Assembly: GCF_000002075.1 (NCBI RefSeq)
Contig: NW_004797290.1
Coordinates: forward strand, 2,145,398-2,209,397
From: Aplysia californica
Lineage: Eukaryota
Direction of reading: 5' to 3'
DNA: 64,000 bases
Positions within the stretch are counted from its first letter, which is position 1. Each line of letters starts with the position of its first letter. The position numbers and the translations under genes were made by a program. Positions 35,666 to 49,940 of this stretch are shown here, in pieces. Under the pieces are notes generated by a model, which did no database searches, was not told the origin of the DNA, and was given only the letters and a program-made list of their open reading frames with translations.

Positions 35666-38600
35666 TATACACAATATGAACTGGCGTTTTCCTCTTCTTT
35701 TTTTTCTTCTATTTTTGCTTTTAAGTTCAGTCCTTTTGTTGTGGTTTGCTCCTTCTTGACTTCTTGCCTATCACCAAACAACTATCATCCTTATCTCCCT
35801 TCCTTTTTTATGTTTGTTACTCTCTTGTAGCACCTCTAATCTTCGGCACTTATATGACCTTGTTGTGTTGCAAGCGCCGTAATACGTCTACTAAAACCAA
35901 AACCAAAATCAGTCCTTATTTGCTATGTATTTCATGTCTTGCCTCCAACCGCTACTTCATAGAGCCTACTTCATATTCATAGTCCAAGTTTAGATTTCCT
36001 AAGCTAGTCGTGATGAAGAAAAAGAAAGTAGTTTGTACTGCACCTTCATTTGAGCATGCTGTATACTTGAATATTTCAAGAAGTTCTGAATGTAGAAGTA
36101 GAAGATAAATTCCATGATATAGAGAATCTTTCATTCCCAATATTCCCTGCTCAACTTGACTTCAGTACGTAGCACATGGAAACAAACCGTCAATACGTCA
36201 ATTCTAGAACCTGCAGTGAACGGTGTGCTCTTCACCCATCTTTGAACTTGGAAGATGAAGACAGGGTGTCATTCAACCTTTACTGCTTTGGCAAGGTTTC
36301 CCATAAATTGCTCCCAAGTGCTATTTGTCTTGTGAGTGGTTGGCGGATGCTTTTGTGTGGTTAGCTCCTTTCTTATCAAACACCTCCTTTTTTGTGCGTT
36401 TGTTACTCTATTGTTATTTGTAATGTCTGTAACATTCGGCACTTATGTGACCTAATCATGTCGCAAGTGCCGTAAAACCAGAAGTGGTTGGTACTGGATG
36501 CTCTGGTGTGGTTTGCTTCTTCTTTCATAATCCTATCAAACTTCTTTCGTTCTTATATTACCTCTACTACTTTTTTGTGTTACTCTCTTCGTCGGCACTT
36601 ATATGACCTAATTGTGTTGCAAGTGCCATGAAACCCTTACTCAAAAAAAGCTCCCCAAAAAATAACCTTTTTGCTATTTCCAAACAAAAATGTCCTTGTC
36701 TAGACTACCTTTTTTAAAGGCTCCCAGTCAGAAGAGGACACCATTGGCAGGTCCTGTCTCTACTTTCTCAACTCTCTGTTGCATCTACTTGGGTGTCCGT
36801 GCTGCTAATGTTCCCAAATTGAAGGAGGGGAAGGGGTTGCCTGGTGTCATTAGTGAGAAAATGGCCACCAAAATTTGGTGACCTTGTGGATAGTTGGCGG
36901 GTGCTCTGGTGTGGTTTGCTCCTTTCCTATCAAAACACCTATTGTCCTTATCTCTCCTCCTTTTTTCTGTTTGTTACTCTCTTGTAACACCTCTAATCTT
37001 CGGCACTTATATAACCTTATTGTGTTGCAAGTGCCGTAAAACTTTTACTCATACTAAAACTTGGTGACCCCCGAAGCTTGAGAGTCCTTGGGAATTGCAA
37101 ATTTACATTTCTTGTGCCTTTAGTCATTTTGCAGTAAAATCCACACACATGTTTTTTAAATGGCCTCTTATCAAACATCTGATCTTCCTTATCTCACTCC
37201 TTTTTTGTGTTTTTTACAAGGGAGTTTAGTGAATGCGTTTGCCGCAGGGCAAATCCGCCAATTACTTTATACGCTCCAAAGACTTTGTGACCAGCAATGA
37301 CTCCTCATTTTTGGGCGGGTCTAACGTTACTCTCTTGTAACATCTATAATCTGCGCCACTACTTGATTGTGTTGCAAGTGCCATAAAAGCTCTTACTGAA
37401 ACAAAATGAAAATGAGCCATAAAGCAAAGAGGCAATGGGATTTCTGGGAGTTCCATTTGCTACATGGAGAGTGTGCCTAAGCGAGCTCACTTCTCATCTG
37501 GCTCAGCCAGTGAGGAACACATGATACAGTATTACACGGAAAGCTCGAATTCGTCCGGACCGACCTGGGGGAAGTTCGAGGATACATGAACAGTGTTGTG
37601 GCATTGGCTGTGTCCGACAGAGAATCAAGGGAAGCAACAAAGATTGCTACTTTTGGGGCAAAACAAGGATACGCAATGCTTTTGAGTTCAATCTGTAATG
37701 AGCCTCCTGGTACCCAAGGCAGTTTAATTGCACGGGTCAGTGTGAGCGGTCTTTAGTCTGCACCATTCAAACAATGCCTTTTCAAATTTTTCAAAATATA
37801 AACAATTTGATAGGATAAGCATATATCGTAACGGTAATCAACAACGTGATGACCAAACAATGCAGCCCTACCCCGCCTCCCCTCACCAAGCTCGCAGTTC
37901 TTTGCGAAGAATGGTGAGGCAGCCAATCGTGTGATGCACAACCCTTCCTCTTGCCCGCTCCACACAAGCCTAGCTAGGCCTAGGGCCTGGGCACGCATAT
38001 CAAACAGCACGCCAAACACAGCACAGCTAGCTGCTTCTGTGGAGGGGGGAAAGAAGCATTTTACCTACTGGCGACCTTGCTTGTTCTGGAGGGGGGGGGG
38101 GGGTTATTGTTAAAATATATTTTTTTGTCCCAAGTGCGCCTCAAAGGACATTGACTTTACTCAAATTTAGATGTATATGATGACATAATTCGTTCAACTA
38201 TTTCGAGTTTTTGTTTGAGCTTCACATAATTTTTTTACAAAGATAAAGAAGGAAAAAAATGGGACCGCAGGCACAGTTCGACGGAGGCTTGATTTTGAGT
38301 CTTCTGTGTTCGACCTATCCATGGTATATTCTTGGTTAAAATGTAGCATGGAATGAGGCAGAAGGAGGTGTCGTGCCTGTGAAGGATGAAAGTACTGTAT
38401 TCATACTTCCCACCATGTACAGGGTGAAGTTCGCTTAAACCAAACACATTGGTGGTCGGCAGATGCTTTTGTGTGGTTCGCTCCTTCTTTCCTATCAAAC
38501 ATCTATTGTCCTGATCTCTCCTCCTTTTTTGTGTTTGCTACTCTCTTGTAACACCTCTAATCTTCAGCACTTATATGACCTTATTATGTTGAAAGTGCCG

Positions 38601-41702: not shown

Positions 41703-41958
41703 GGCGTCGGTGGCCTAGTGGTTAGGCTCTTGGACTCGTAACCGTAAGGTTGTGGGTTCGAATCCCATCAGGGGCCCGACGTAGTGTCCTTGGGAAAGGC
41801 ACTTTGCACTGTATGCTTCCGCGGAAGCCGAGAATGTTTCTGAGTGTTCTCAGAGGGTCTGCTGGGGTAATATAATAGTTGTAAAGCGCATAGAGCATGC
41901 TCTTGAGCATGGATATGTGCTATATAAATGCAATTATTATTATTACATTATTATTATT
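41703..41958 (+). mobile_element. Second copy of the CORE-type SINE, internally deleted
   Basis: Same head GGCGTCGGTGGCCTAGTGGTTAGG and same tail as 39986-40337. Confidence 0.85.
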
Positions 41959-42381: not shown

Positions 42382-42469
42382 CTTATCTGCAGAAATGCTT
42401 GTAAACTATGTTCAGCTTGTTTGTAAAACTGAACAAATGGATACAGCGGGTCTGCTTCCGGAGTGTCAC
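42382..42469 (-). CDS. PDCD7: PDCD7 coding exon 8 (DPLYPFVQFYKQAEHSLQAFLQIR)
   Basis: Matches the PDCD7 PF..YY.QAEHSL.ALIQIR motif; phase 1 to 2. Confidence 0.93.
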
Positions 42470-43129
42470 CTGTTTTCACCAAAAGGAAAAAACAAAATCT
42501 TAACCTGAGGCAAGTTCATAATGCATGTGTGTATTAAGAGGAATAAAATGATGTAGTTTATTTCTAATTCATTTCAAACAGCCAGTTCCAAACACTTTTC
42601 CTCTAATAACTAAGTTGAAACATTATTGAAAAAAGACATATATTCTACAGGTTTAGTATTACCAACTCACCAGAGACACAGACACTAAAGCTCTTGGACA
42701 TCTCCAAAGAGCTAAAAAAAACAAAAAAACACCCTTTTAGAAATCCAAAATTAGTTACTTCTTTCTCCATTCTTCATTTGTAGAATTTCCTATGATGTAA
42801 TTCAAGAAAATAGAAAACAAAAACTTAAGAATCAGCACACACAAACAAGAGCGCAAAAAACCCACAAAAATTGTTGCCTCTGTAACAGATATTAATCTAA
42901 AAGAATTAAAATTTGAGAACCCAATATCTCGAAATATATGCTGTAAATTTAGCCTTGTTGCTCCAAATTCCATTCTTTGACAAACCAACTCCAGTCAAAA
43001 TGCAATGCAGCCAAACAAAAATTGTGTTAATTCCAGTGAGACCAAACACATTGCATATCATCAAAACAGACCAAAGAATTACAAGGTCACAACACATCTC
43101 AACATGATATGTGAGATATTTTTCATTAC

Positions 43130-43253: not shown

Positions 43254-44156
43254 CTGCATAAAACAAAAAAGAGAAGAAGCAACATGCAGTAACAATAAGC
43301 ATAAGCAAAGAGACAATGCCTGCATCATAGTATAGAACTCCAAGGCTTGATCAATTAAAGCAGAACTTCCCCTCCAACCCCAAGCTCTTTCCGCACTACA
43401 ACTACAACAAAACTTTAAAACAATCTGAGATTTAATAAAACCTTTAGACCAATGGATTATTTTGTACTGGTACACCCAACTTCATATTTTGCCTGTGAGT
43501 AAAAATTTAACTGCTACTGGTACTACGACAGCTAAAGAATGGGATGAGTCATTTTGCCAATTTTCCCTGATTCATGAACAAAGAAGGAATACAGCAGGGA
43601 CGAAGGGAAGGGAAGCACATGCACTGTGCTTCGTATCTGATACCAAAATCAGATCCCATTCAAGTTTACAACCCCCCTCCAAAGATTACAGCGAATCACT
43701 ACAAAAGTTCAATAAGATACCTGTATGTTGATTTATGAGAGGAGCCGAAACAGGACTAGGAGCTTCCAAACATAAACTCTAGTACTATGTAGTCTTGTTT
43801 GTTTCGGGGGGGGGGGGGGGGGGGTTCTTGAGAGTAATAGGAGTCAAGTAATATAAAATATAACTACCAGAATTCGTTTCACGAGGCTACATCCAACTGC
43901 TTGTTTTACACGAGATATGAGAGAAAGACGGACAGAAGTAGAGATGAAAAGATGAGCAGCAAATAAACATGCCTGATCCCAGCTATGGGCTGTCAGCTTT
44001 AAAAAGAAAACACGATTTCAATTATTAGATATAAATGCAAAGATGTTCTTAACACATCAATATGAAATTCATTACACCATCTAGCCAGTAGACGCGCCAA
44101 CTTCTCTGAGTTAACAAAAGGGGCTTGACATATATTTCATAATCTATCAAACTTAC

Positions 44157-44269
44157 CTTCAGTCTTGATTCTTCTTCTTTGTAATGCTCTAACTGAGCTT
44201 TCACAAGCCGTGTCATATCTGTGATCTTCTGCTCAAAACTTTGCCTAGATTCTCCGAGATCAGTATCAC
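44157..44269 (-). CDS. PDCD7: PDCD7 coding exon 6 (DTDLGESRQSFEQKI...HYKEEESRLK)
   Basis: ctgcag acceptor, AAG|gtaagt donor, phase 1 to 0. Confidence 0.88.
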
Positions 44270-45143
44270 CTGCAGAGAAAAGTCACAGGTGAATATGAAT
44301 TTCAGTGTCAATACAAATACAACTTTTTACAGATAACCCAGTTACTGGGTAGACATTACCAGAAAAACTCTACATTCTAAAGTGAAGACAACAGTTGCAC
44401 AAATGCCCAATACAGCACTCATCTATGACTATGACTCTGGAGATAGCAGCAATCATGTGTACGTAAATGGCTCTGATGGGTAAATGGTTGAAGGTGGAGC
44501 CTCAGATTTATTGTCCATCTCCCATAGGACAGAGATAAGTGGGTGAAGAGCCGTGAAAACTCACTACAACCAAGTTCAAAAGAATATCAGTAGGGACATA
44601 AATCACTATATTTTTGCATGACAGCAACTGAGCTAATGGCGGGCCCTAAGCTACCAAACCCTTACAACACAGAGCCAAGCAACATTTAACATGCCATGCA
44701 GTCGGTACAAGTGGGAGGTTGGTGGGTGTTCTGAAGTTGGTAACTCCTTCTTTCCTATAAAACATCTGTTGTCCTTATTAAATCTCTCCTCTTTCTTTAA
44801 TATGTATCTTATTATCTTTAATCTTCGGCACTTGTATCATGTCCTAATTGTGTTGCAAGTGCCGTAAAACTTTTACTAAAACTAAATCGTCGCCTGAGCA
44901 CAACAACCCTGTAACCCACACTATGTAAAAAAAACACTTTTTTTTTGCTTTTTCCACTAAATGTAATGTTGCGGATTTTGTGTCAAATTTTTACACATGT
45001 AGTTAAATAAACATTGCCTGTGCAACATTCAGACTTTAATTTTTAGTAAACATTGTTAGATGAATTGACAAAGTTTTTCCCTTTCGTAAAATTTTGTTTT
45101 TGTGGGATACAGGGTTGTTGTACTCAGGCGACGAAATAGTCAC

Positions 45144-45282
45144 CTCTTTTCACAGCAGCATCTCGTCGAATGAGTCGGAGTTTCTGCAGTGCTGTCATTG
45201 TCTCCACAAGTCTGTTGGCATCCTGGATCTCCTTGGTCACCTTACTGAGGGTCTGGTCAGCAGCCGCTTTCCTTTTTTCTTT
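45144..45282 (-). CDS. PDCD7: PDCD7 coding exon 5 (KEKRKAAADQTLSKV...LQKLRLIRRDAAVKRG)
   Basis: Resembles the recalled PDCD7 motif KAAAD.VLSEV...LEKLRKLRKEAA.RKG; splice phases are consistent. Confidence 0.92.
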
Positions 45283-46153
45283 CTTTGAAAATGAGAGACA
45301 AACAAAATATGAGACCATTTTCCTACTGGCCAAAGTATGATGCGTTTGGCTTTTCATATCTGTCTAGCTTATGTGTACCAAAACACCTTGTCTATTACAA
45401 CAATAAATCACATTCCCCCTTCTAAATGAAGATGAGAGCCTCTGCTTTCTATGACAAAGCAGCACATAAACAGAAAGTACACCGGTAACCAGCCACCAAT
45501 AAATGGAGCCTCCTGCTTTGCCTTTGATGGAAGAAGTATGATATCCGCATGATATCAAATTGTATGGCAAACCCTAAAAGGAACTGGATATGGACTGATG
45601 CTCCCAGGAAAGAAGCAATTTTTCTTTTCAAAGAAGAAAACATGCTTCTATACAATTTATTAATCAAATAAGTCACTCGTCCTTCCCTGAAGACATTGTG
45701 ACAAGAGAAATTTTAAAAAGAAAACAAACTGAGTGAGCTCACAATATAGGTGGCAAGCAAGCACATCAGAGAGGTTTTCTCTTACTTCTTTTCTATCCAT
45801 TCGACTATTGTCTTGGTCTGAGTCTGCTTCAGATTCAAAATGCTTATATGGTCTAAAAAGATTAAACAGCACTGATTATCTTAAACTTAATTTCGACATC
45901 TAACATTAAAAAAAAGGAAAATCCTTTGCAGGTCACATTAGGAAAAAAAAAAAGTAAATGTTCACTCACTGCATACAGTATTGTCTAATATTAGAAAACA
46001 GGGGAGGAAAAAGTATAATAAACCCTGAATTCATTGATTTGCCACAAAACCCCAAGTGTATTTTTTAAAAATAATTTTGGGGGGTATCGCGACTTTAAAT
46101 TACTACTTTGCAAACAAAAATGAATGAAAGACAATCCTTCAACAGATACATAC

Positions 46154-46285
46154 CATGCTCTTGTCCTTTATCTGCTTCATTACTTTTTCCTGCCATTGAT
46201 CAATCTTTGTGCTCTTTGTTTCCCATTCCTCTCTCTGCCTCTGCAGCTGCTCACTTTTCATCCTTCTTGCCTCTCTCAGCCTTGC
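46154..46285 (-). CDS. PDCD7: PDCD7 coding exon 4 (ARLREARR...KIDQWQEKVMKQIKDKSM)
   Basis: ctccag acceptor, ATG|gtatgt donor; IDxW motif of the PDCD7 coiled coil. Confidence 0.88.
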
Positions 46286-46957
46286 CTGGAGATATGATTA
46301 AACAAGATCTGTGCTGAACATGAGCAAATATTTTCTCATAGCTAAAATATATGGGCGCAAACATATTTGGGGAAAATAATTAAGTAGCACATTACATTTT
46401 GTATCACACTACATTTTTTTTGGTAATACAGCATTTAAGCATAATAACAAATAGTGAAAGATATCAGTAAAATTTCAAGTAATAGCTCATGCCTGCCTCT
46501 GAGGGGGAAATACGTGCGGGGGGTACCACAATGAAGCCAGGTTCCAGCCACAGTCTCTTGTAAGCCTCATGGCCAACATTTTCAGCTTGTACAGTCAAAA
46601 ACATGAGGGTGAGCACAAAACTTTAGTAAGTTATATAGAATCAAACTAGTTTCCCTCAAGTGTCAACCCATGTTTCATCTAAAAGTTGAGAGACACATTA
46701 ATGAAATAAGAGTGTACTCATAATTTCAAAAGGTATGAGATATGAAGCACTCATGACAGTATTGTTTAAAAAATGAAAAAGCAAACAATCACTTTTGATC
46801 AGCATGGCGATAATGGAGTGCATTACAAATTAAGTTTCCTATAAAAGACAAACCTTTTAGAGTATTTTCGTACATAAGCATTTGTCTTCTAAATGAGATA
46901 CACATTTTTATAATAATAAAAGCATACACAGGTCATAATCAGAAAACGTCATACATT

Positions 46958-47101
46958 AAAGGATACATGAGACATCATGTGAAGACCATCAGAAGAAAAA
47001 AATTAGAAGCAAAGGATATGCCTTGGTGCACTTCAGCAAGACATAGTGGTCATTCATATAAAATCGTGAAATCTAGTCAAATCCATAGCCCAGTCAAATA
47101 A
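46958..47101 (-). promoter_or_regulatory. Candidate poison exon plus paired U12-type 5' splice-site motifs (USSE-like)
   Basis: Acceptor ttttcattcattctctttcag at 47102; in-frame TGA 47056-47054; ATATCCTTT 47019-47011 and GTATCCTTT 46966-46958. Confidence 0.45.
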
Positions 47102-47529
47102 CTGAAAGAGAATGAATGAAAATGTCATAAAATAATCTCATTAAGTTAATAAAATATGTTAACAAGAGTTCTAACACAAGCACATGTACATGTCGTTTGT
47201 TCCTATTCATTTGATGAAGACTATGACTAAACGATGCAACTGTTTGGAAAAACAAGTCTTTTTTTATCACTAAATTCCAAAACACTGTACATCAAGATGA
47301 ACAAATTTGCTTTAAAAAGTTTTCAGGAATAGAAGAAAAAAAATGGCTTTATTTCTCAATTTCAAAGATAAAAAAGAAAAACAAAAAAGAGCTTTTCTCA
47401 CAGTTACATAATAGGAATTTTTAATTTAATCATAACAAAATGTGTTTATCTTTTAACTTTCTAAACAAGACATTTAAATAATCATGAATCAAGGTTCACT
47501 CGCAGCTGACTTGACTCATAAACACTTAC

Positions 47530-47616
47530 CCTTTTCAGTCTCATTCCCTTTAAACGCTCCATCATATCACACGCCAACGGCTTCTCCAGATATAACTGCA
47601 AGTCTTTCAATTTTTC
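47530..47616 (-). CDS. PDCD7: PDCD7 coding exon 3 (EKLKDLQLYLEKP...GMRLKR)
   Basis: tttcag acceptor, AGG|gtaagt donor, 29 codons. Confidence 0.85.
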
Positions 47617-48457
47617 CTGAAATATATAATGTTACATCAAATAAGCAATACACATTATATAGATTTTATAGGAATTGGATCACAAGTTTACATGGGCCAC
47701 TTGAGTGCATGTAAGGGGGCAGTGATTTTAGTTGGGTTGGGATTGTTTTTTTTACAGTGACACCTCTTAACAAAGAAACTTTCAACAAAGCCTCAAATGC
47801 AGAAATCATGAAATATGGAAACTCAGTAAAAATAATGAAGCCTATTGTATAATGATGATAGTGCAACACTTCAGTGTTAATACAATTGTCAAGAAACTTA
47901 ACTCTATCCTGTTCATGTTCTTCACCAACAATGGCAGCCCATTTGTTCAGCTTCCCCCGCACATAGCAGCCTTCGAGTGTTCACATTTTTATATCGATAA
48001 TGGGAATAGATGAAGAAGACTAATAGTTGTAAAGTCCATAGAGAATACTGTAGAATGTGGATATAATGCACTTTATAAATATGCAAATATTTTTATTATT
48101 ATTACTAAGACTACTGACCTCGGCTCTGACAAACTTTCATCACTAAAAATCAAAACAAGGCCACATCATAAATCCATTTTTATCACAGCCAGGCTTACCG
48201 TTGAGGAAACCCCATTGGAAAAAAACAAGTAGCTTGCCCAGCCATTTTCAACCAGTTTGAACTCTAGGGCTGCATTTTTTTCTGTCAGTTTTGGCCAGAT
48301 CAAACAGGAAAGTATTCAGCCAAATAAATCCATTTCACTTTCGATCAACCTTAAAACAATGCAAATCCTAAATATTTTGTTATTTTGCCCTGCAACCCTG
48401 AAACCTTCTGTGTATCTTTTCACTTATAGGAATACAAAAGTTTATTCCCTAGCATAC

Positions 48458-48601
48458 CTTTTCAGCTTCTATTTTGCCTGAAGCTTCTTCCCAAGTCCTG
48501 CTGTCTGCCTCGCACACAACCTGCTCCATTCCACTGATGTGCTCAGACATGCTCGATAACACTCTCCTCAGTTCTGCCAAATGTTGAACATGCTCCCAAA
48601 C
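48458..48601 (-). CDS. PDCD7: PDCD7 coding exon 2 (VWEHVQHLAEL...WEEASGKIEAEK)
   Basis: ttttag acceptor, AAG|gtatgc donor, 48 open codons. Confidence 0.85.
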
Positions 48602-48945
48602 CTAAAAGTACAGGCATTTATAACAAGAATGTAAAAAAGAATCAAACATTAAGCATCTGCAACATCATGTCAAGAGTTGAGCACTTCTCTTATTACCAAA
48701 CATGATCTCTAGACTCTGGTTGATTATAGGAAGAAAACATTTAGTTTAGTTATAATCCATTCCAAAACAAAACTCGCAAAAATAAGAACACATTCATATT
48801 ACATTCCGTACTCTAGAAGATTCAGTGTCATTCAGCAACAAGCACATTTGAATATAACGAAACAAATTATCAAAACAAGGTATCGATTAAGACATTTTTA
48901 AAAAGACACAACAAGAAACTTAGGGTTACTCAATTACTGTCCTAC

Positions 48946-49692
48946 CTTCATAGAATTCTCTCCTTTCAAGGATACTGACTTCTTCTGTATCTTTCTGCTT
49001 TTTGAAGACTGCTTGACCCATTCTTCCAACATTCTGGCCCCTACTTCTTTTCTAGAAAGAGGTCGGCTGACAGATTTTCCCTGACTTAACGATGAATTCG
49101 AGGGCACTCTGGGGGCTTGAAATGACAGAGATGTCCCAGAGTTTTGTATGCTTGAATTTCGATTTGCAGCTGCCTGACTGTAAGGTGGTGGAGGCCTCGT
49201 TAAGTTTGACTGCATCTGTGGGGCTCCACCAAGTGGTGAGGGAAATGGGGTAGGGGGAGGGACGCTTAGATTGTTAGTTGGCATCACAAAGTCTGGTGGA
49301 TTCCCAGGAGGTGGTTGATTCATGGCTGGTTGAGGTGGAGGTGGAGGATGGTTTAACGGGTACATCCCTTGAGTATTGAAAGGAGCAACAACGTTACTCG
49401 AGTGTGGTTGGTTGTAAAAAGGAGGCCTGAAAGGCACTCCTGCCTGTGGTCCTGGCGGTGGTTGAGAAAAATTAAAACTATTGTTCATTGGAGGAGGGTG
49501 ATGGCCACCGGGTAATGGCGGTGGTGGCATAGAAAAAATCTGTCCACTACTGGGGTGTCCAGGAGGGGGAACAGTCATTCTTGGATTTGGTGGAGCGTAC
49601 TGATGGTAATTACCAACAGCCCCGTGTTCTTGATATGGTGCATAGCTGTAGTGATGTCCATCTTGTGGACTTGCAGCATGCTGGTGAGACAT
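48946..49692 (-). CDS. PDCD7: PDCD7 / U11-59K first coding exon, Pro-rich N-terminus
   Basis: 249-codon Pro/Gln-rich ORF ending AAG|gtagga; a Pro-rich N-terminus is typical of PDCD7; in phase with downstream exons. Confidence 0.88.
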
Positions 49693-49940
49693 GTCTCAAA
49701 CTTGAGCTTGAAAGACAGGTTCCTGTCAAAGCAAATCTGAAAAAAAAAATCAAACACAAAAGGGATTTAAATACAGCTGGGTACATAAAATGAACAAGGA
49801 AAACTTGAAATCACGGACAGCTCGTACAATAGCCATTCTCCAACTGATATCTCTTTAATTGTTCATTGACAGAATACCCGAATTATGCCAAATGCATAAT
49901 TAGTCAATCCTCAGTGTGTTTTAAGTTATCCAAGCCTGAC

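What the first reader, a model, noticed from the sequence alone, without database searches (positions are those of the whole stretch)
46958..47125. USSE-like U11 feedback module with a poison exon inside the U11-59K (PDCD7) gene
Seen in sequence: in the U2-type intron between coding exons 3 and 4 (minus strand) there is an unused strong acceptor, ttttcattcattctctttcag (47102). Spliced to exon 3 in phase 0 it reads LFDWAMDLTRFHDFI*, a premature stop at 47056-47054. About 82 nt downstream lie two perfect minor-spliceosome donors, ATATCCTTT (47019-47011) and GTATCCTTT (46966-46958), 44 nt apart. Established: tandem U12-type 5'ss motifs (USSE) bind U11 and activate an upstream U2 acceptor, making unproductive isoforms of U11-48K (SNRNP48) and U11/U12-65K (RNPC3). 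Inference: the 59K subunit gene may carry an analogous autoregulatory sensor, which I do not know to be described. Caveat: known USSE spacers are much shorter than 44 nt.
Basis: partly seen in the sequence, partly recalled or inferred. Interest (0 to 1): 0.85.

Follow-up and report, generated by a model that had tools for sequence, protein, structure and literature searches.

The report
U11-sensor poison splice site in PDCD7
The sea hare gene for the U11/U12-59K protein (PDCD7) carries, inside one intron, a hidden splice acceptor followed by two perfect minor-spliceosome donor motifs; the layout is kept in six other sea slugs and snails and the acceptor is used in RNA, so it looks like a third, undescribed feedback sensor for minor-spliceosome levels.

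Summary

- **Gene:** the minus-strand gene is PDCD7 (U11/U12-59K) of Aplysia californica.
- **Module:** intron 3 holds a strong U2-type acceptor (exon would start at 47101). Then come 82 nt, ATATCCTTT (47019-47011), a 44-nt gap and GTATCCTTT (46966-46958).
- **RNA evidence:** one public RNA run has a contig joining exon 3 (47530) to 47101 with GT..AG ends. A second, 1229-nt contig runs unspliced from 47102 through both motifs and exon 4, then splices on normally.
- **Conservation:** the same module sits in the orthologous intron of five other heterobranch gastropods, with 54-80 nt from acceptor to motif 1 and motifs 30-39 nt apart. Physella keeps the acceptor and the second motif only. In all six relatives the new exon starts with TAA.
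- **Specificity:** ATATCCTTT is the only 9-mer shared by five of these introns. The ordered motif pair occurs twice in the 927-Mb genome, and the other copy is a satellite.
- **Not a real U12 intron:** no U12 branch site follows the motifs.
- **Contrast:** Aplysia SNRNP48 shows no tandem donors.
- **Literature:** reviews name only SNRNP48 and RNPC3 as hosts of this kind of element (the USSE).

U11 dependence, NMD and nuclear retention are inferred, not tested.

The parts
47530..47616 (-). PDCD7 coding exon 3 (EKLKDLQLYLEKPLACDMMERLKGMRLKR). It ends in phase 0, and its donor GTAAGT starts at 47529.
   Evidence: RNA joints 47615/6->48457 and 47530->47101; translation; annotated protein P0001.
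47102..47122 (-). Alternative U2-type 3' splice site: pyrimidine tract ttttcattcattctctttc followed by AG (47103-47102).
   Evidence: Sequence. Used in RNA run X4, joint 47101<->47530 with GT..AG ends. The acceptor yTTTCAG|T is conserved in six other gastropods.
47020..47101 (-). 82-nt stretch from the alternative acceptor to motif 1. In phase 0 it reads LFDWAMDLTRFHDFI and stops at TGA 47056-47054.
   Evidence: In the six relatives the equivalent stretch is 54-80 nt and begins with TAA.
47011..47019 (-). U12-type 5' splice-site motif 1, ATATCCTTT. Proposed U11 binding site.
   Evidence: Identical 9-mer at the same relative place in five other species, and the only 9-mer shared by five orthologous introns.
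46958..46966 (-). U12-type 5' splice-site motif 2, GTATCCTTT. Proposed second U11 binding site.
   Evidence: GTATCCTT is conserved in all six relatives, Physella included.
46286..46957 (-). Rest of intron 3. It stays unspliced in the alternative isoform, so the new exon runs on into exon 4. It has no U12 branch-site consensus.
   Evidence: The 1229-nt X4 contig covers 47102-46154 without a break (table 8); branch-site scan.
46154..46285 (-). PDCD7 coding exon 4 (ARLREARRMKSEQLQRQREEWETKSTKIDQWQEKVMKQIKDKSM), with a normal U2-type acceptor.
   Evidence: Joint 46154->45282; P0001 joins ...RLKR|ARLREA...; sequence.

Best explanation

Proposed mechanism: when U11 (or the U11/U12 di-snRNP) is plentiful, it base-pairs with the two U12-type donor motifs in intron 3. 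The motifs are not spliced. Through exon-definition contacts they instead strengthen the U2-type acceptor 54-82 nt upstream. Exon 3 is then joined to that acceptor. The reading frame stops at once (TAA in the relatives) or after 15 codons (Aplysia). The transcript keeps the U11 sites and the rest of the intron, so it is unproductive, either degraded by NMD or held in the nucleus. Less 59K protein, which bridges U11-48K and U12-bound 65K, would then lower di-snRNP assembly and close a negative feedback loop.

Shown here: the module, its use as an acceptor in RNA, the unspliced motifs in that isoform, the premature stop, and deep conservation within heterobranch gastropods.

Inferred: U11 binding, U11 dependence, the fate of the isoform, and the feedback itself.
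For: 1. RNA: run X4 has a contig joining 47530 to 47101 with GT..AG ends. A 1229-nt contig covers 47102-46154 unbroken and then splices to exons 5 and 6, so the molecule is processed RNA.
2. Conservation: CAG|TAA acceptor, ATATCCTTT and GTATCCTT in the same order in the orthologous intron. Distances are acceptor to motif 1, then motif 1 to motif 2 start to start:
   - Plakobranchus 80/32
   - Elysia chlorotica 76/39
   - Candidula 74/30
   - Lymnaea 74/37
   - Biomphalaria 54/33
   - Physella keeps the acceptor and motif 2 only
.
3. The only non-low-complexity 8- and 9-mers shared by five of these introns are the two motifs. Shuffled introns share 0.7 8-mers on average.
4. Genome-wide, ATATCCTTT-N15-45-GTATCCTT has two hits in 927 Mb, and the other is a satellite. 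The module is single-copy.
5. No U12 branch-site consensus lies between the motifs and exon 4 in any species, and the exon-4 acceptors have ordinary pyrimidine tracts.
6. The genome has a U11 snRNA gene with the conserved 5' AAAAGGGC that pairs with TCCTTT.
7. The host gene is a U11/U12-specific subunit. The same logic is established for SNRNP48 and RNPC3 (PMC5473595, PMC8329584).
Against: - The RNA junction rests on assembled contigs of one run, whose library type is only guessed. The tool marks the joint 'between: not known', with 29 nt on the short side.
- Three raw poly(A) RNA runs gave no read between 46522 and 47297, although the gene is thinly covered there (exon-3 bin depth 1-3).
- The normal 47530->46285 junction was not among the joints shown, so isoform ratios are unknown.
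- The motifs are 30-53 nt apart. From memory the described USSEs are much tighter; I could not check this, because Niemela 2015 and Verbeeren 2010 are not held.
- Physella has lost motif 1.
- The element was not seen in a sea cucumber or a bird, so it is lineage-restricted as far as sampled.
- No binding or perturbation data exist.
Confidence: 0.75

Rival explanations
1. The motifs are genuine U12-type splice donors. The acceptor and motif 1 (or 2) bound a small cassette poison exon, and a real minor intron is removed from the motif to exon 4. Minor-spliceosome activity would then control the gene by catalysis, not by enhancer binding.
For: Both motifs match the U12 donor consensus perfectly. 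An 82-nt exon (47101-47020) would be a normal cassette size. Assembled contigs drop rare forms, so a spliced variant could be hidden.
Against: No U12 branch-site consensus lies anywhere between the motifs and exon 4 in five species. The exon-4 acceptors have plain U2-type pyrimidine tracts, and in Aplysia the nearest look-alike, TTGTTTAAT, matches 6 of 9 positions and is not conserved. The only RNA form seen runs through both motifs unspliced. Two donors in tandem are not needed for a simple intron.
Confidence: 0.12
2. It is a conserved poison 3' splice site of PDCD7 controlled by something other than U11, for example an SR or hnRNP protein, or the 59K protein itself. The TATCCTT words would serve as that factor's binding site or as part of an RNA structure.
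For: Many splicing factors autoregulate through conserved poison exons (papers listed). U11 binding was not tested here.
Against: What is conserved is exactly the 8-9-nt U12 donor consensus, including the A/G first base, twice, in a gene of the very particle that reads this sequence. The sequence between and around the motifs is poorly conserved. PDCD7 is not known to bind RNA (own knowledge).
Confidence: 0.08
3. Chance: two donor-like words and a cryptic acceptor with no function, the RNA contig being splicing noise or an assembly artefact.
For: The motif count in the window alone is not significant. Unordered pairs are no more frequent than the reversed control genome-wide. RNA support comes from one run.
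Against: The same ordered module sits at the same intron position in seven species whose introns otherwise share no words. It is unique in the genome. The junction ends fall exactly on the annotated exon-3 donor and the predicted AG.
Confidence: 0.03

Closest known systems
USSE of SNRNP48 (U11-48K)
   Same: Tandem U12-type 5' splice-site motifs in an intron of a U11/U12-specific protein gene. They lie downstream of an alternative U2-type acceptor and are not themselves spliced. Acceptor use gives a transcript with a premature stop, and one form keeps the USSE inside a long retained exon held in the nucleus (PMC5473595; PMC3584512).
   Different: The host gene differs (59K, not 48K). The motifs are 30-53 nt apart start to start rather than close together (the tight spacing is from memory and was not checked). 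No short cassette with its own U2 donor was seen. In the relatives the stop codon is the first codon after the acceptor. So far it is found only in heterobranch gastropods. Aplysia's own SNRNP48 shows no tandem donors in the 20 kb searched.
USSE of RNPC3 (U11/U12-65K)
   Same: U11 binding to a tandem donor repeat activates an upstream 3' splice site. The isoform retains the USSE and is unproductive (nuclear retention). It is a cross-regulatory loop, because the regulated protein is not the one that reads the 5' splice site (PMC5473595, PMC8329584). That would also be true of 59K.
   Different: In RNPC3 the element lies in the 3' UTR region and changes UTR length. Here it lies in a coding-region intron and truncates the reading frame. 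The RNPC3 element is conserved in vertebrates. I could not locate Aplysia RNPC3 to compare.
Ordinary autoregulatory poison exons of splicing factors (SR proteins, SMNDC1, RBM39)
   Same: A conserved unproductive splice choice with an early stop in the factor's own gene (papers).
   Different: In those cases the protein binds its own pre-mRNA. Here the conserved words are the recognition sequence of an snRNA (U11), so the assembled particle, not the free protein, would be sensed.

Membership tests
USSE (U11 snRNP-binding splicing enhancer) | Two (tandem) copies of the U12-type 5' splice-site consensus on the sense strand | tested here: met
   ATATCCTTT and GTATCCTTT. Both are conserved in five other species and one in a sixth.
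USSE (U11 snRNP-binding splicing enhancer) | An alternative U2-type 3' splice site a short, constrained distance upstream that is used in RNA | tested here: met
   The acceptor lies 82 nt upstream and is used in run X4. The distance is 54-80 nt in five relatives, with a conserved CAG. The distance range of the described USSEs could not be checked.
USSE (U11 snRNP-binding splicing enhancer) | The donor motifs are not used for splicing | tested here: inconclusive
   The one assembled isoform runs through both motifs, and no U12 branch site follows them. Contigs cannot exclude rare spliced forms.
USSE (U11 snRNP-binding splicing enhancer) | Close spacing of the two motifs, allowing cooperative binding | tested here: inconclusive
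Spacing here is 30-53 nt start to start. The primary papers are not held, so the criterion itself is unverified.
USSE (U11 snRNP-binding splicing enhancer) | Host gene encodes a U11/U12 di-snRNP-specific protein, and the alternative isoform is unproductive | tested here: met
   The host is PDCD7/59K. A premature stop follows 15 codons after the acceptor, or immediately (TAA) in the relatives. Actual decay or retention was not tested.
USSE (U11 snRNP-binding splicing enhancer) | U11 snRNA base-pairs with the motifs, and acceptor activation depends on U11 | not testable with these tools
   Only indirect: the genome has a U11 gene with the conserved 5' AAAAGGGC.
U12-type (minor) intron | Donor consensus paired with a U12 branch-site consensus (TCCTTRAY) 10-20 nt before the 3' splice site | tested here: not met
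   No such branch site lies before exon 4, or conserved elsewhere downstream of the motifs, in five species.

The most novel reading that the evidence does not exclude
In heterobranch gastropods the U11 feedback sensor sits in the 59K (PDCD7) gene instead of, or as well as, the 48K gene. It works with two widely spaced U11 sites (21-44-nt gaps). That would show that the USSE principle is portable between subunit genes, has been re-invented or moved during animal evolution, and does not need tightly abutting donor repeats. Aplysia SNRNP48 lacking tandem donors fits a relocation.
Probability: 0.45. Interest if true: 0.8.

Novelty: new member of a known kind. Interest (0 to 1): 0.74.

Why it matters
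Only two genes, SNRNP48 and RNPC3, are known to be controlled by U11 binding to non-spliced donor repeats. A 2021 review states they are the only known cases of regulatory cooperation between the two spliceosomes (PMC8329584).

A third host gene would matter in three ways:

- It encodes the subunit that bridges those two proteins, so all three members of the U11-U12 bridge could be feedback targets.
- It gives a natural variant with wide motif spacing and variable acceptor distance (54-82 nt) for testing the rules of cross-spliceosome exon definition.
- It suggests that such sensors turn over between genes in evolution.

It is also directly testable with a minigene and a compensatory U11 mutant.

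Tried and rejected
1. A protein search with the exon-1 peptide, meant to catch truncated isoform proteins, found nothing.
2. Profile and single-sequence protein searches to reach PDCD7 of non-heterobranch molluscs or annelids returned only heterobranchs, one bird and one sea cucumber. The phylogenetic limits of the element are therefore unknown.
3. Looking for a canonical USSE in Aplysia:
   - SNRNP48 was located and confirmed, but it has no tandem donors.
   - RNPC3 could not be located. A triple-motif site on C443 lies about 28 kb from an ALKBH8-like RRM gene and is a local repeat.
   - A tight AT/GT pair on C147 lies among simple repeats.
   - The only other ordered pair, on C6, is a satellite.
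4. A GTATCCTTG inside exon 1 (48975) was considered as a third sensor or a U12 donor. RNA uses the GTAGGA donor at 48945, and the word is not conserved.
5. Contig depths of run X4 were examined to estimate isoform ratios. They are contig-wide means and mutually inconsistent, so no ratio is claimed.
Exons were searched one by one by reference.
7. The primary USSE papers (Verbeeren 2010, Niemela 2015) are not in the held library.

Full report
**What is in the sequence.**
On the minus strand of the window, ATATCCTTT lies at 47019-47011 and GTATCCTTT at 46966-46958. Upstream, the tract ttttcattcattctctttcag ends at 47102, so an exon starting at 47101 would lie 82 nt before the first motif. Exon 3 of the host gene ends in phase 0 at 47530. 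Joined to 47101 the frame reads LFDWAMDLTRFHDFI and stops at TGA 47056-47054.

**The host gene.**
- Exon 5 (45282-45140) hits Pfam PDCD7 (PF16021, E 2.9e-7).
- A whole-library HMMER search with that exon returned a 537-aa protein identical over the exon (P0001). Its sequence contains the window's exons 1-7. One source names it 'programmed cell death protein 7 isoform X2 [Aplysia californica]'.
- The genome has 927,310,431 bases in 4332 contigs.
- P0001 joins ...MERLKGMRLKR directly to ARLREARRMK..., the productive exon 3-exon 4 junction.

**RNA evidence.**
Four runs were laid on 44000-49800. The joints confirm these exons:
- exon 1 ends at 48946
- exon 2 is 48599-48457
- exon 3 is 47616-47530
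- exon 4 ends at 46154
- exon 5 is 45282-45140
- exon 6 starts at 44265

In run X4 (assembled contigs, and RNA because the contigs are spliced) one contig joins 47530 to 47101. A 1229-nt contig starts at 47102 and runs without a break through both motifs, the rest of the intron and exon 4 to 46154. It then splices to exons 5 and 6. A separate low-depth contig (47073-47372) is the unspliced intron.

So there is an isoform in which the hidden acceptor is used, the donor-like motifs are not spliced, and everything down to exon 4 becomes one long exon.

Limits of this evidence:
- It is one run.
- The tool marks the joint 'between: not known'.
- Contig depths are contig-wide means and do not give ratios.
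- The productive junction was not among the 15 joints shown.
- Three raw poly(A) runs (X21-X23) cover the gene thinly (exon-3 bin depth 1-3) and have no read between 46522 and 47297.
- Those runs do have 5-7 reads each reaching a few tens of bases into the intron just upstream of exon 4. This is unexplained.

**Conservation.**
Genomic PDCD7 loci of other species were fetched through their annotated proteins and the exons mapped by tblastn. In the intron before the exon-4 equivalent, on the gene strand, the module looks like this:

| Species (locus) | Motif 1 | Motif 2 | Acceptor to motif 1 (nt) | Motif 1 to motif 2, start to start (nt) |
|---|---|---|---|---|
| Aplysia californica (window) | ATATCCTTT 47019 | GTATCCTTT 46966 | 82 | 53 |
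| Plakobranchus ocellatus (L012) | ATATCCTTT 9379 | GTATCCTTC 9411 | 80 | 32 |
| Elysia chlorotica (L023) | ATATCCTTT 3452 | GTATCCTTG 3491 | 76 | 39 |
| Candidula unifasciata (L013) | ATATCCTTT 15454 | GTATCCTTA 15484 | 74 | 30 |
| Lymnaea stagnalis (L014) | ATATCCTTT 4682 | GTATCCTTA 4719 | 74 | 37 |
| Biomphalaria pfeifferi (L017) | ATATCCTTT 4073 | GTATCCTTT 4106 | 54 | 33 |
| Physella acuta (L024) | decayed | GTATCCTTA 2541 | – (95 to motif 2) | – |

- Each species has a pyrimidine tract plus CAG upstream of the motifs.
- In all six relatives the sequence after the acceptor begins TAA. Where the phase can be read from the tblastn coordinates (Biomphalaria, Physella, Candidula), exon 3 ends in phase 0, so TAA is an immediate in-frame stop.
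- The introns are 0.8-7.4 kb long and otherwise unalignable. Across five of them the only shared 9-mer is ATATCCTTT.
- The only shared 8-mers that are not A/T runs are ATATCCTT, TATCCTTT and GTATCCTT. Shuffled introns share 0.7 8-mers on average.
- A sea cucumber (L015) and a bird (L025) have no RTATCCYY on the gene strand. The bird lacks this intron.

**Chance and repeats.**
- RTATCCTTT pairs with a 20-50-nt gap number 76 in the genome, mostly satellites, against 203 for the reversed-pattern control. Pairs as such are not enriched.
- The ordered pair ATATCCTTT-N15-45-GTATCCTT has two hits in the whole genome. The other hit (C6:2878288) sits in a degenerate ~17-nt tandem repeat.
- The 201-nt module is single-copy, so it is not a transposon.

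**Enhancer or real minor intron?**
I scanned from motif 2 to exon 4 for the U12 branch-site core CCTTRAY. Single mismatches were allowed only in TTA-containing matches preceded by pyrimidines. Nothing lies at a usable distance from exon 4 and nothing is conserved. The exon-4 acceptors carry ordinary pyrimidine tracts. Together with the unspliced contig, this favours non-spliced U11 binding sites over true donors.

The genome encodes U11 snRNA (Rfam RF00548, 106 bits, C799). Its 5' end reads AUAAAAGGGCC, carrying the AAAAGGG that pairs with the TCCTTT part of the donor. The pairing rule itself is established knowledge.

**Comparison with what is known.**
- The USSE is described as a tandem repeat of U12-type 5' splice sites. 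It binds U11, is not spliced, and activates an upstream U2-type 3' splice site.
- In SNRNP48 this gives an NMD substrate, and also a long retained exon held in the nucleus. In RNPC3 it gives a nuclear-retained long-3'UTR isoform (PMC5473595, PMC3584512).
- A 2021 review states that these two genes are the only known cases (PMC8329584).
- Full-text searches for PDCD7/59K together with USSE, poison exon or autoregulation found no description of such an element in PDCD7.
- The present module meets the sequence, position, host-gene and unproductive-isoform criteria.
- It differs in host gene and in motif spacing (21-44-nt gaps). The tight spacing of known USSEs is from memory, because the primary papers are not held.

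**Aplysia SNRNP48.**
The gene was located at C404:~693.4-702.6 kb on the plus strand. Its CHHC zinc-finger exon and a second exon match PDB 8r7n chain F, residues 56-89 and 196-240 (E 7.9e-5 and 1.4e-11). It has no pair of RTATCC[TC] words in 20 kb of gene strand. RNPC3 could not be located.

**Mechanism proposed.**
U11, or the di-snRNP, binds the two motifs. Exon-definition contacts strengthen the acceptor 54-82 nt upstream. Exon 3 is spliced to that acceptor. No usable 5' splice site follows, so the remainder of the intron stays in. The message carries an early stop and bound U11, and is degraded or kept in the nucleus. 59K output falls.

Shown: the architecture, acceptor use, the unspliced motifs, the stop codon and the conservation. 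Inferred: U11 binding and dependence, the fate of the isoform, and the feedback.

**Verdict.**
This is a new member of the USSE kind, in a third subunit gene, so far restricted to heterobranch gastropods, with unusually wide motif spacing. I put 0.75 on the USSE-like reading. The main rival (0.12) is that the motifs are true U12 donors of a cassette exon.

Noticed in passing
window 48967-48975 (-): A third U12-like donor word, GTATCCTTG, lies inside coding exon 1, in phase 0 and 30 nt before the real donor. RNA uses the GTAGGA donor at 48945, and the word is not conserved in relatives.
   Followed up: partly
window 44744-44886, and about 48087-48267: A short repeat in the exon 5-6 intron attracts very large RNA depth: hundreds of reads in the raw runs and summed contig depth above one million in X4. 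Reads join it to a second copy near 48087 with GACG between. It is probably an expressed high-copy element, not part of PDCD7.
   Followed up: no
window 42662-42736 (-) and 42386-42475 (-): The annotated 'isoform X2' protein (P0001) ends ...LFGPQALWRCPRALVSVSLVTLRKQTRCIHLFSFTNKLNIVYKHFCR. An extra exon near 42.7 kb shifts the frame and removes the conserved C-terminal domain (GDTPEADPLYPFVQFYKQAEHSLQAFLQIR / WDLFLVP...). This is a second, apparently unproductive splice form of the same gene.
   Followed up: no
window 46286-46421 (-): In three poly(A) RNA runs, 5-7 reads each extend from exon 4 a few tens of bases into the intron, but none reach beyond 46522. A possible extra acceptor tatattttag|CTATGAG near 46343 would also give an early stop (CTA TGA).
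   Followed up: no
window 41704-41776 (+): A borderline tRNA match (Rfam RF00005, 30.1 bits against a gathering score of 29) inside a PDCD7 intron. A similar peptide, '...SNPxPxxYESxSLTTRPP', recurs in six-frame translations of other loci of this genome, so it is probably a tRNA-derived SINE.
   Followed up: no
window 37665-37672 and 37578-37585 (-): Two more donor-like words (GTATCCTTG and GTATCCTCG), 87 nt apart on the gene strand, about 2 kb downstream of the PDCD7 stop codon. No acceptor or conservation was checked.
   Followed up: no
G000:C404:693000-702999 (L007): The Aplysia SNRNP48 (U11-48K) gene lacks any tandem U12-type donor words on its strand, so the classical 48K USSE seems absent in this species.
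   Followed up: partly
G000:C6:2878256-2878347 (L028/L029): A degenerate ~17-nt tandem repeat (GAGAGGTATCYCTTTGT-like) that by chance contains three perfect U12-donor words. It is not in a recognisable gene.
   Followed up: yes
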